NCBI RefSeq assembly: GCF_035594765.1
Contig: NC_085841.1
Location: 329,725,402 to 329,789,401 of the forward strand
Direction of reading: 5' to 3'
From: Anolis carolinensis
Lineage: Eukaryota
DNA: 64,000 nucleotides
In this document: positions 10,155 to 12,793 of the stretch, in pieces
Layout: every line of letters begins with the position of its first letter
How positions within the stretch are numbered: position 1 is the stretch's first letter
Translations under genes and position numbers: made by a program
The notes under the pieces: model-generated
What the model was told of the DNA's origin: nothing
Database searches by the model: none
The model's input: the letters and a program-made list of their open reading frames with translations, nothing else

Positions 10155-12793
10155 ACACTGGCAAATAAAGCTTTCCCAGAAACTCAATTAACAGGGGACA
10201 ATGCCTGCTGTCAATCAACTTAAGTACCTGGCTCTCTTTCAACACAACAGTCACACAACAGTTAGACTTTGACCACAGGAGCCAAGCCCACACTCAGTTT
10301 AAAATCTTAGCCAAATCTTAGCCAAATCCTACCTGAAGCCAGGGAGCAAAAATGTCCTCCTGCTGCCTCTGCTTCTGCGAGAACCAACTGCCCTTCTGGG
10401 ATCAGGCTCTGGCAGAAACTCACACTGGCAAATAAAGCTTTCCCAGAAACTCAATTAACAGGGGACAATGCCTGCTGTCAATCAACTTAAGTACCTGGCT
10501 CTCTTTCAACACAACAGTCACACAACAGTTAGACTTTGACCACAGGAGCCAAGCCCACACTCAGTTTAAAATCTTAGCCAAATCTTAGCCAAATCCTACC
10601 TGAAGCCAGGGAGCAAAAATGTCCTCCTGCTGCCTCTGCTTCTGCGAGAACCAACTGCCCTTCTGGGATCAGGCTCTGGCAGAAACTCACACTGGCAAAT
10701 AAAGCTTTCCCAGAAACTCAATTAACAGGGGACAATGCCTGCTGTCAATCAACTTAAGTACCTGGCTCTCTTTCAACACAACAGTCACACAACAGTTAGA
10801 CTTTGACCACAGGAGCCAAGCCCACACTCAGTTTAAAATCTTAGCCAAATCTTAGCCAAATCCTACCTGAAGCCAGGGAGCAAAAATGTCCTCCTGCTGC
10901 CTCTGCTTCTGCGAGAACCAACTGCCCTTCTGGGATCAGGCTCTGGCAGAAACTCACACTGGCAAATAAAGCTTTCCCAGAAACTCAATTAACAGGGGAC
11001 AATGCCTGCTGTCAATCAACTTAAGTACCTGGCTCTCTTTCAACACAACAGTCACACAACAGTTAGACTTTGACCACAGGAGCCAAGCCCACACTCAGTT
11101 TAAAATCTTAGCCAAATCTTAGCCAAATCCTACCTGAAGCCAGGGAGCAAAAATGTCCTCCTGCTGCCTCTGCTTCTGCGAGAACCAACTGCCCTTCTGG
11201 GATCAGGCTCTGGCAGAAACTCACACTGGCAAATAAAGCTTTCCCAGAAACTCAATTAACAGGGGACAATGCCTGCTGTCAATCAACTTAAGTACCTGGC
11301 TCTCTTTCAACACAACAGTCACACAACAGTTAGACTTTGACCACAGGAGCCAAGCCCACACTCAGTTTAAAATCTTAGCCAAATCTTAGCCAAATCCTAC
11401 CTGAAGCCAGGGAGCAAAAATGTCCTCCTGCTGCCTCTGCTTCTGCGAGAACCAACTGCCCTTCTGGGATCAGGCTCTGGCAGAAACTCACACTGGCAAA
11501 TAAAGCTTTCCCAGAAACTCAATTAACAGGGGACAATGCCTGCTGTCAATCAACTTAAGTACCTGGCTCTCTTTCAACACAACAGTCACACAACAGTTAG
11601 ACTTTGACCACAGGAGCCAAGCCCACACTCAGTTTAAAATCTTAGCCAAATCTTAGCCAAATCCTACCTGAAGCCAGGGAGCAAAAATGTCCTCCTGCTG
11701 CCTCTGCTTCTGCGAGAACCAACTGCCCTTCTGGGATCAGGCTCTGGCAGAAACTCACACTGGCAAATAAAGCTTTCCCAGAAACTCAATTAACAGGGGA
11801 CAATGCCTGCTGTCAATCAACTTAAGTACCTGGCTCTCTTTCAACACAACAGTCACACAACAGTTAGACTTTGACCACAGGAGCCAAGCCCACACTCAGT
11901 TTAAAATCTTAGCCAAATCTTAGCCAAATCCTACCTGAAGCCAGGGAGCAAAAATGTCCTCCTGCTGCCTCTGCTTCTGCGAGAACCAACTGCCCTTCTG
12001 GGATCAGGCTCTGGCAGAAACTCACACTGGCAAATAAAGCTTTCCCAGAAACTCAATTAACAGGGGACAATGCCTGCTGTCAATCAACTTAAGTACCTGG
12101 CTCTCTTTCAACACAACAGTCACACAACAGTTAGACTTTGACCACAGGAGCCAAGCCCACACTCAGTTTAAAATCTTAGCCAAATCTTAGCCAAATCCTA
12201 CCTGAAGCCAGGGAGCAAAAATGTCCTCCTGCTGCCTCTGCTTCTGCGAGAACCAACTGCCCTTCTGGGATCAGGCTCTGGCAGAAACTCACACTGGCAA
12301 ATAAAGCTTTCCCAGAAACTCAATTAACAGGGGACAATGCCTGCTGTCAATCAACTTAAGTACCTGGCTCTCTTTCAACACAACAGTCACACAACAGTTA
12401 GACTTTGACCACAGGAGCCAAGCCCACACTCAGTTTAAAATCTTAGCCAAATCTTAGCCAAATCCTACCTGAAGCCAGGGAGCAAAAATGTCCTCCTGCT
12501 GCCTCTGCTTCTGCGAGAACCAACTGCCCTTCTGGGATCAGGCTCTGGCAGAAACTCACACTGGCAAATAAAGCTTTCCCAGAAACTCAATTAACAGGGG
12601 ACAATGCCTGCTGTCAATCAACTTAAGTACCTGGCTCTCTTTCAACACAACAGTCACACAACAGTTAGACTTTGACCACAGGAGCCAAGCCCACACTCAG
12701 TTTAAAATCTTAGCCAAATCTTAGCCAAATCCTACCTGAAGCCAGGGAGCAAAAATGTCCTCCTGCTGCCTCTGCTTCTGCGAGAACCAACTG
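10155..12793 (-). repeat. Tandem array of ~9.9 x 267-bp monomers forming the CR1 5' end
   Basis: Unit starts (+ strand acactggcaaataaagc) at 10155, 10422, 10689, 10956, 11223, 11490, 11757, 12024, 12291 and 12558; the last unit is 236 bp. No differences between copies were spotted by eye. Confidence 0.97.

What the first reader, a model, noticed from the sequence alone, without database searches (positions are those of the whole stretch)
10155..12793. CR1 5' end is a 2.6-kb array of ~10 apparently identical 267-bp monomers
Seen: 9 full units plus a 236-bp partial unit abut the ORF1 leader, and the element ends inside a unit at CAGTTG (E-box/Inr-like) where the host MITE resumes. Each unit has an internal AAATCTTAGCC duplication and only one CpG. 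Established: monomer-array internal promoters are a hallmark of mouse L1, whereas CR1s are nearly always 5'-truncated with poorly known promoters. Inference: a convergently evolved, CpG-poor monomer promoter in a very young CR1.
Basis: partly seen in the sequence, partly recalled or inferred. Interest (0 to 1): 0.78.

Follow-up and report, generated by a model that had tools for sequence, protein, structure and literature searches.

The report
Monomer-repeat 5' end of lizard CR1
A jumping gene (CR1) of the green anole carries at its front end a run of ten identical 267-base repeats that belong to the element, probably act as its transcription start module much as in mouse L1, and seem to have been re-expanded at this site after insertion.

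Summary
Window 10155-12793 holds nine full 267-bp units plus a 236-bp partial unit, all 100% identical. The array is the 5' end of a minus-strand Anolis carolinensis CR1 with two uninterrupted ORFs.

- The monomer belongs to the CR1 family. Four other copies in the assembly carry 0.3, 1.0, 2.3 and 2.9 units directly upstream of the same leader.
- Four of the five copies start within 5 nt of each other, inside the unit's only E-box, CAGTTG (P about 1e-4). That points to a fixed RNA 5' end.
- The 2.8-kb sense leader has no ATG and no poly(A) signal.
- "Very young" is not supported. The body carries 14 private, mostly nonsynonymous substitutions, which predicts about 8 differences in the array. 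None is seen, so the array was expanded or homogenised in place, or is mis-assembled. Copy number could not be checked with reads.
- The array is not unique to Anolis. Zootoca and Pelodiscus CR1s carry unrelated 5' repeats, and Zootoca shares the 23-nt CpG-rich hairpin at the array-leader boundary.

Promoter activity is untested. A 2026 paper mentions 5' repeat subunits in some CR1-group elements. This scan noted the same 267-bp monomers on another CR1 copy (s1-529886).

The parts
12558..12793 (-). 5'-terminal partial monomer (236 bp). The element starts at 12793 with CAGTTGG, which is monomer position 32.
   Evidence: The empty site is defined by the paralogous host repeat.
10155..12557 (-). 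Nine full 267-bp monomers, all identical. One CpG per unit. No ATG and no AATAAA on the sense strand.
10132..10154 (-). 23-nt CpG-rich palindromic linker (CGCGCGCGCC-TGAC-GGCGCGCAC) between the array and the leader. It folds as a 7-bp GC hairpin. Zootoca CR1 has it at the same position. Four other Anolis copies lack it.
   Evidence: An independent contig from run X18 carries it.
9972..10131 (-). Non-repeated 160-nt leader (tether) shared by all five copies that reach the leader.
8700..9971 (-). ORF1, 423 aa, with an SGNH/GDSL esterase domain. 98% identical to Anolis carolinensis proteins.
5773..8508 (-). ORF2, 911 aa, with endonuclease (APE) and reverse transcriptase domains.
5686..5772 (-). 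3' UTR ending in ATTCTATG repeats, the CR1 hallmark. The TAA at 5683-5685 may be a 3-bp target-site duplication.

Best explanation
The 267-bp units are the monomeric 5' UTR module of a young Anolis carolinensis CR1 family. The layout is a tandem array, then a 23-nt GC hairpin, then a 160-nt non-repeated leader, then ORF1.

Shown:
- The array travels with the element.
- The number of units differs between copies.
- Copies begin at one fixed place in a unit.

Inferred:
- RNA polymerase II starts at the CAGTTGG site of a monomer, so each unit carries a start site. By analogy with mouse L1, each unit would also carry promoter elements.
- The resulting long leader is kept free of upstream AUGs and poly(A) signals, so that ORF1 can still be reached.
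- Retrotransposition can only keep or shorten the array, and deletions cluster at the foot of the hairpin.
- Arrays are rebuilt on resident copies by unequal exchange or replication slippage. The perfectly uniform 9.9-unit array at this locus is most likely such an expansion or homogenisation after insertion.
For: Structure of the element:
- Array of 9 full units plus a 236-bp partial unit, all identical.
- Esterase ORF1, APE/RT ORF2 and an ATTCTATG tail.
- Precise insertion into a host repeat whose paralogue gives the empty site.

Other copies from GCA_035594765.1:
- L002 has 2.9 units, L003 2.3, L001 0.3 and the minus-strand copy in L005 1.0. In every case the units lie directly 5' of the same leader.
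- 5' starts are at monomer positions 32, 35, 36, 35 and 76. The chance of four of five falling in a 5-nt span is 1.3e-4.
- The start site lies in the only CANNTG of the unit and fits an Inr-like GGCAGT.

Strand-specific signals:
- No ATG in the 2,822-nt sense leader. P(0) = 0.0006 for one unit plus leader in dinucleotide shuffles.
- The sense strand has no AATAAA or ATTAAA. The antisense strand has 2 ATG and 1 AATAAA per unit.

Independent runs:
- Runs from four studies hold the monomer, the unit-to-unit junction and a 958-nt contig running ORF1-leader-hairpin-monomer.

Expansion or homogenisation after insertion:
- The body has 14 private substitutions in 4,444 bp. Ten of the 11 coding ones are nonsynonymous. 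Four of the 14 differ from every contig laid there in four runs.
- That rate predicts 8.3 differences in the array, but none is seen (Poisson 2.5e-4, Fisher 0.0017).
- Arrays of the other copies do carry 7 singleton substitutions in 1,725 bp.

Cross-species:
- Zootoca CR1 has a 2.5-kb array of unrelated 183-bp units and the same hairpin at the same boundary.
- Pelodiscus CR1 has 1.9 copies of a 347-bp unit.
Against: - No transcription data. The fixed 5' end could be set by something other than initiation.
- Only five copies were examined.
- The Inr-like motif occurs six times per unit, so its match at the start site is weak.
- The unit has one CpG and no TATA box at the usual distance, unlike known monomer promoters.
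- A copy with only 83 bp of monomer (L001) still has an uninterrupted ORF1, so a long array is not needed for a copy to exist.
- The array-leader junction differs in every copy, which also fits arrays being by-products of template switching.
- The copy number at this locus is unverified. Contigs cannot count units, and I could not establish which assembly the window comes from.
Confidence: 0.6

Rival explanations
1. The array at this locus is an assembly artefact. The real locus has fewer, more or non-identical units. The perfect uniformity comes from piling up reads of many CR1 5' ends or from consensus polishing.
For: Zero differences in 2,639 bp against about 8 expected from the body. 9.9 units is the largest number among the five copies examined. 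No read or contig spans the array.
Against: Arrays of 2.3-2.9 near-identical units stand in a chromosome-level assembly. A 2.5-kb array also stands in Zootoca. Another first-stage note reports 8.4 units of a 316-bp monomer elsewhere in this genome (s1-590241, unchecked). Both junctions of the array are clean. A 2.6-kb array is far shorter than modern long reads. That last point is my own knowledge, and the assembly behind the window is not established.
Confidence: 0.15
2. The monomers are passive 5' UTR sequence built and trimmed by reverse-transcriptase template switching around the GC hairpin. The promoter elements that matter lie elsewhere, in the hairpin or leader. Arrays are by-products, not additive promoter units.
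For: The array-leader junction is heterogeneous on the monomer side (positions 267, 266, 160, 117, 36) and nearly fixed on the leader side (positions 24-37, the foot of the hairpin). Read joints, converted, show the same pattern. The hairpin, not the monomer, is conserved between Anolis and Zootoca. Copies with 0.3-1 unit exist.
Against: Transcripts must start inside a monomer to carry monomers into new copies, and they start at one fixed site. A hairpin up to 2.6 kb downstream cannot position that start. Absence of ATG and poly(A) signals on the sense strand shows that the unit is under selection as part of a working mRNA.
Confidence: 0.2
3. The fixed 5' end is made by RNA processing, for example a self-cleaving ribozyme at the start of each unit as in R2, RTE or L1Tc-type LINEs, acting on read-through transcripts rather than by initiation.
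For: The fixed 5' end has no TATA box.
Against: No ribozyme family matched at E up to 5 in Rfam on either strand. Efficient cleavage at every unit would leave at most one unit per copy, yet copies have up to 9.9.
Confidence: 0.05
4. The monomer is an independent satellite that this CR1 copy happened to land beside or captured once.
For: A precedent exists: Tribolium CR1-3_TCa carries 1.2 TCAST satellite monomers in its 5' UTR (PMC3411249).
Against: All monomer matches in the window and five loci (about 140 kb) lie directly 5' of a CR1 leader in sense orientation. The outer edge of the array coincides with the insertion junction in a host repeat. Summed contig depth of the monomer is of the same order as that of ORF1 and the leader, not far higher, though this is a rough measure.
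Confidence: 0.03

Closest known systems
Mouse and rat L1 monomeric 5' UTR (A, F, Tf and Gf monomers plus tether)
   Same: A tandem array of roughly 200-650-bp monomers lies at the 5' terminus, upstream of a non-repeated tether and ORF1. The number of monomers varies between copies. The outermost monomer is truncated. Arrays must be regained after loss during retrotransposition (PMC5381506; bioRxiv 10.1101/2022.08.06.500894).
   Different: The LINE clade is different (CR1, with esterase ORF1 and no poly(A) tail). The monomer sequence is unrelated. The unit has one CpG instead of a CpG island, and no YY1 site. 5' starts are fixed while the array-tether junction varies, the reverse of the textbook L1 picture. 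A conserved GC hairpin sits at the boundary. Promoter activity is not shown here.
Repeating 5' subunits in CR1-group elements (PMC13343379, 2026, legend of Fig. 4)
   Same: Species-specific subunits of 100-500 bp are repeated near the 5' UTR of CR1-group LINEs.
   Different: That paper reports them only for elements without ORF1, with 1-5 subunits, and without analysis. Here the element is a canonical CR1 with esterase ORF1 and up to 9.9 units, and there is evidence on start site, junctions and turnover.
5' UTRs of chicken CR1-B, turtle PsCR1 and fugu Maui (PMC2734521, citing Kajikawa 1997 and Poulter 1999)
   Same: E-boxes are a noted feature of vertebrate CR1 5' UTRs. Short (32-bp) direct repeats occur in turtle and fugu. 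5' UTRs differ between subfamilies while the ORFs are conserved.
   Different: Those 5' UTRs are about 240 bp, with short repeats only. Here the repeat is 267 bp and the array reaches 2.6 kb.
Tribolium CR1-3_TCa with TCAST satellite in its 5' UTR (PMC3411249)
   Same: A CR1-clade element whose 5' UTR is made of tandem-repeat monomers that may supply a promoter.
   Different: There, 1.2 units come from a major pericentromeric satellite. Here no independent satellite was found, and unit number varies from 0.3 to 9.9.

Membership tests
CR1-clade LINE | ORF2 with apurinic-type endonuclease and reverse transcriptase; closest relatives are CR1 ORF2s | tested here: met
   Pfam Exo_endo_phos plus RVT_1. 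Hits of 52-97% identity to reptile and bird CR1-type ORF2 proteins.
CR1-clade LINE | 3' end with (ATTCTRTG)n repeats instead of a poly(A) tail | tested here: met
   ...CTATTCTATGATTCTATGATTCTA at 5686-5710. The feature is as stated in PMC2734521.
CR1-clade LINE | ORF1 with an esterase (SGNH/GDSL) domain | tested here: met
   Lipase_GDSL_2, E = 8e-11.
Monomer-type LINE 5' UTR (mouse L1 kind) | Tandem monomers at the 5' terminus, upstream of a non-repeated tether and ORF1 | tested here: met
Monomer-type LINE 5' UTR (mouse L1 kind) | Monomer number varies between copies of the family and the outermost monomer is truncated | tested here: met
   9.9, 2.9, 2.3, 1.0 and 0.3 units in five copies.
Monomer-type LINE 5' UTR (mouse L1 kind) | Transcription starts within a monomer | tested here: inconclusive
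   Four of five DNA copies start at positions 32-36 (P = 1.3e-4). No RNA 5'-end data were available.
Monomer-type LINE 5' UTR (mouse L1 kind) | Each monomer has promoter activity and the activity is additive | not testable with these tools
   Needs reporter assays.
Monomer-type LINE 5' UTR (mouse L1 kind) | Monomers are CpG islands with YY1 sites | tested here: not met
   One CpG per unit, observed/expected 0.07. No ATGG is possible because the sense strand has no ATG.
Free-standing satellite DNA | Arrays occur independently of the transposon | tested here: not met
   No monomer lies away from a CR1 leader in the window or five loci. The sample is small.
LINE 5' self-cleaving ribozyme (HDV-like) | Match to a ribozyme fold at the 5' end of the RNA | tested here: inconclusive
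   No Rfam ribozyme match at E up to 5. Such folds are easily missed by sequence models.

The most novel reading that the evidence does not exclude
Squamate CR1s share an ancient CpG-rich hairpin that marks the original 5' boundary of the element. Upstream of it, each lineage has independently acquired its own monomer array (267 or 316 bp in Anolis, 183 bp in Zootoca). The hairpin makes the reverse transcriptase stall and switch template, which both deletes and builds monomers. Resident copies re-expand their arrays in place. Together this would be a general, L1-independent answer to how LINEs resist 5' erosion, using CpG-poor promoter units that escape methylation-driven decay.
Probability: 0.2. 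Interest if true: 0.75.

Novelty: new variant of a known kind. Interest (0 to 1): 0.55.

Why it matters
CR1 is the dominant LINE of reptiles and birds, yet its promoter is barely known because almost all copies are 5'-truncated.

This anole family offers several copies that reach the 5' end, three of them with an uninterrupted ORF1 and ORF2, and a defined 5' start. The unit number runs from 0.3 to 9.9, and the boundary hairpin is shared with a distant lizard. That makes the CR1 promoter question directly testable in a model lizard with CAGE and with reporters carrying 0-10 monomers.

The contrast between a decayed body and a perfectly uniform array bears on a second question. It is direct sequence evidence for something so far only speculated for mouse L1: that monomer arrays are regained on resident copies.

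Tried and rejected
- Exact look-ups of the window's own ORF1 and ORF2 found no recorded gene. Copies were reached instead through three NCBI cluster members.
- A third protein search with a partial ORF2 gave no further Anolis loci, so the sample stayed at five copies that reach the leader.
- L004 (Anolis) and L007 (Zootoca) are 5'-truncated and uninformative.
- The alligator (L009) and Varanus (L010) copies are old or broken, with no array or palindrome upstream. They say nothing either way.
- Read laying returned only k-mer contigs. It cannot count units, cannot show RNA starts, and whether the 'RNA?' runs are RNA is a guess.
- The joints it lists rest on sides of 20-27 nt, so I use them only as consistent hints.
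- Rfam found nothing meaningful in the unit or leader.
- Novick et al. 2009, the primary description of anole LINEs, is not held. I cannot exclude that it or Repbase already describes these monomers.
- Similarity between the Anolis, Zootoca and Pelodiscus units is limited to a few 9-mers on both strands, which fits chance. I therefore reject homology of the monomers and keep only the hairpin match.
- The Inr-like match at the start site is not significant on its own, because there are six matches per unit.
- One apparent private substitution at 5681 lay in the flank and was removed from the count.
- The two N runs (4988-5137 and 15531-15676) were left untouched, and no letters from them were searched.
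Full report
**Observation.** Tandem Repeats Finder reports a single array at 10155-12793 with period 267, 9.9 copies, 100% matches and no indels. A direct comparison shows nine full units and a last unit of 236 bp, each identical to the first. Two 30-mers of the unit occur ten times each, only in the array, against none expected. Each unit contains the 11-bp motif AAATCTTAGCC 2.5 times. Each unit has one CpG (observed/expected 0.07, against 0.26 for the window, 0.43 for the CR1 body and 1.10 for the leader).

**Anatomy.** The element lies on the minus strand. 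Read 5' to 3', its parts are as follows.
- A partial monomer starts with CAGTTGG at 12793, followed by nine full monomers down to 10155.
- A 23-nt CpG-rich palindromic linker occupies 10154-10132. It folds as a 7-bp GC hairpin.
- A 160-nt non-repeated leader follows.
- ORF1 runs from 9971 to 8700 (423 aa, GDSL/SGNH esterase).
- ORF2 runs from 8508 to 5773 (911 aa, endonuclease plus reverse transcriptase).
- A short 3' UTR ends in ATTCTATG repeats near 5686. This is the CR1 hallmark as stated in PMC2734521.

ORF1 is 98% identical to Anolis carolinensis proteins, so the genome is the green anole.

**Insertion site.** The sequence outside 12793 and the sequence outside about 5686 are two halves of one host repeat. 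A second copy of that repeat at 15199-15375 reads straight through the site (...GCAACGAAAATAA|TGTTATGG...). The outer edge of the array is therefore the true 5' junction of the insertion, with at most a 3-bp duplication (TAA). I did not test whether the host repeat is a MITE. It lies beside one arm of an inverted duplication that also contains the two masked stretches.

**Other copies of the family.** Three NCBI proteins from the ORF1 cluster led to loci in assembly GCA_035594765.1 on three chromosomes. A wider fetch of one locus exposed a second copy there. The bodies are 98.8-99.2% identical to the window's element. In every copy that reaches the leader, the monomer sits directly upstream of it, in sense orientation.

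| Copy | Units | 5' start (monomer position) | Monomer position joined to the leader |
|---|---|---|---|
| Window | 9.9 | 32 | 267, then the hairpin linker |
| L002 | 2.9 | 36 | 266 |
| L003 | 2.3 | 76 | 160 |
| L001 | 0.3 (83 bp) | 35 | 117 |
| L005, minus-strand copy | 1.0 | 35 | 36 |

No monomer occurs anywhere else in the window or in these loci.
- The 5' starts cluster. In a simulation with uniform phases, four of five within a 5-nt span has probability 1.3e-4.
- That site is the only CANNTG of the unit. It fits an initiator-like GGCAGT, but six such matches exist per unit, so this adds little.
- The array-leader junction is variable on the monomer side and nearly fixed on the leader side. 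The leader always resumes at positions 24-37, the foot of the hairpin.
- Only the window's copy keeps the hairpin.

**Independent runs.** Twenty runs from ten studies, all of one organism, hold at least half of the sampled words of the stretch. Four were laid, each from a different study, and all are k-mer contigs.
- They confirm the unit-to-unit junction: an 86-nt contig with no differences.
- One 958-nt contig runs from ORF1 through the leader and the hairpin into the first 30 nt of a monomer. The hairpin form is thus a common variant.
- They show monomer variants at two unit positions in roughly half of the depth.
- Several joints link leader positions 24-34 to varied monomer positions (38-50, 124, 180, 214; converted). 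The anchoring sides are only 20-27 nt, so I treat them as hints.
- Contigs cannot count units, show RNA ends or prove expression. The copy number at this locus remains unverified.

**Signals of a working sense-strand leader.** The whole 2,822-nt sense 5' UTR has no ATG, while the antisense strand has 24. For one unit plus the leader, dinucleotide-preserving shuffles give 5.5 ATGs on average and none in only 0.06% of trials. The sense strand also lacks AATAAA and ATTAAA, while the antisense strand has one AATAAA per unit. This is what selection on a long, scanned, uninterrupted mRNA leader would produce.

**Age against uniformity.** Against five other copies, the window's body has 14 private substitutions in 4,444 bp (0.32%), similar to the others (0.32-0.54%).
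- At four of these sites, no laid contig in any of the four runs carries the window's letter.
- Ten of the eleven coding changes are nonsynonymous and only one is a CpG transition.
- They therefore look like neutral decay after insertion, not the signature of an active sublineage.
- The same rate predicts 8.3 differences among the 2,639 bp of the array, but none is observed (Poisson 2.5e-4, Fisher 0.0017).
- The arrays of the other copies do carry 7 singleton substitutions in 1,725 bp (0.41%), as expected.

So the perfect identity here is not explained by a very recent insertion. Either the array was expanded or homogenised in place, by unequal exchange or replication slippage, or the assembly is wrong at this point. 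In-place expansion is one of the routes proposed, without direct evidence, for regaining mouse L1 monomers (bioRxiv 10.1101/2022.08.06.500894).

**Other reptiles.**
- A Zootoca vivipara CR1 has an uninterrupted ORF1, a 1,001-codon ORF2 frame and an (ATTCTATG)3 tail. Upstream it carries a 2.5-kb array of at least eleven 183-bp units, interleaved with a 122-bp spacer, which gives a 488-bp higher-order period.
- The Zootoca units are unrelated to the Anolis monomer.
- Between the array and the leader, Zootoca has GCGCGCGCC-TAGC-GGCGCGCGC. This matches the Anolis linker at 18 of 20 positions, in the same place (E = 0.002 in that small comparison). The hairpin is thus older than either monomer, and the Anolis copies without it are deletion derivatives.
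- The Zootoca copy also starts at the last base of its only E-box.
- A Pelodiscus sinensis CR1 has 1.9 identical copies of a 347-bp unit just upstream of ORF1, again without ATG on the sense strand.
- The alligator and Varanus copies were old and uninformative.

**Literature.**
- Monomer arrays are described for mouse and rat L1. Lizard L1 5' UTRs show no tandem duplication (PMC5381506).
- Chicken CR1-B has a 240-bp 5' UTR with two E-boxes and weak promoter activity. Turtle and fugu CR1 have 32-bp direct repeats (PMC2734521).
- Tribolium CR1-3 carries 1.2 satellite monomers in its 5' UTR (PMC3411249).
- A 2026 survey notes, in a figure legend, 1-5 species-specific 100-500-bp subunits near the 5' UTR of some ORF1-less CR1-group elements (PMC13343379).
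- A 2024 survey of squamate CR1 does not discuss 5' UTRs (PMC11303007).
- The primary paper on anole LINEs (Novick 2009) is not held, so prior description there or in Repbase cannot be excluded.
- This scan's first stage noted the same 267-bp monomers on another CR1 copy (s1-529886) and 316-bp monomers on a further one (s1-590241). I could not read those loci.

**Mechanism and rivals.** The best reading, at about 0.6, is a monomer-type 5' UTR with a start site in every unit. Its length is eroded by retrotransposition and hairpin-associated deletion and restored on resident copies. The steps have different standing.
- Shown: membership of the monomer in the element, variable unit number, fixed 5' start, strand-specific absence of ATG and poly(A) signals, and excess uniformity of this array.
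- Inferred: initiation at CAGTTGG, promoter function of the units, and the way the array expanded.

The rivals are:
- an assembly artefact in the unit number (0.15);
- monomers as passive by-products of template switching, with the real control elements elsewhere (0.2);
- a processed rather than initiated 5' end (0.05; no ribozyme match);
- an independent satellite (0.03).

**Verdict.** It is a new variant of a known kind: a LINE monomer 5' end in a canonical CR1, CpG-poor, with a conserved boundary hairpin. Interest is moderate to good (0.55).

Noticed in passing
window 10132-10154; L006 7877-7900: A 23-nt CpG-rich palindrome or hairpin sits at the array-leader boundary. It is conserved (18 of 20 nt) between Anolis and Zootoca CR1, although their monomers are unrelated. 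Four other Anolis copies have lost it.
   Followed up: partly
L006 5335-7877 (Zootoca vivipara, OY735904.1): The CR1 5' array consists of at least eleven 183-bp units with a 122-bp spacer after every second unit, giving a 488-bp higher-order period. There is one sense-strand ATG in 2.66 kb. The copy starts at the last base of its only E-box, CAGGTG.
   Followed up: partly
L008 7297-7953 (Pelodiscus sinensis, CM112011.1): A turtle CR1 with open ORF1 and ORF2 frames has 1.9 perfectly identical copies of a 347-bp unit just upstream of ORF1. There is no sense-strand ATG. The unit holds GGCAGTTGG, the same 9-mer as the Anolis start site, which may be chance.
   Followed up: partly
L001 7452-7761 (= L005 9452-9761): The 5' end of this CR1 copy (monomer position 35) abuts a 310-bp piece of CR1 ORF2 in the same orientation. 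This is either an insertion into an older CR1 or a chimera made by template switching at the RNA 5' end.
   Followed up: no
L005 9760-14287 (+) and 20096-15405 (-): Two CR1 copies of the same family, each reaching the monomers, lie tail to tail within 10 kb.
   Followed up: no
window 4460-5175 and 15489-16011: These are the arms of an inverted duplication (469 nt at 93%, plus shorter pieces). Each contains a masked N run (4988-5137 and 15531-15676). Earlier notes call them a convergent pair of U1 snRNA genes, and the CR1 sits between them. The N runs were left untouched.
   Followed up: partly
window 16387-16576: A perfect 93-nt inverted repeat, 100% complementary, with only 4 nt between the arms.
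   Followed up: no
L005 about 19980-20000: One monomer of the minus-strand copy lacks one 11-bp GGCTAAGATTT repeat, so it is a 256-bp unit. The internal 11-mer is thus itself length-variable.
   Followed up: no
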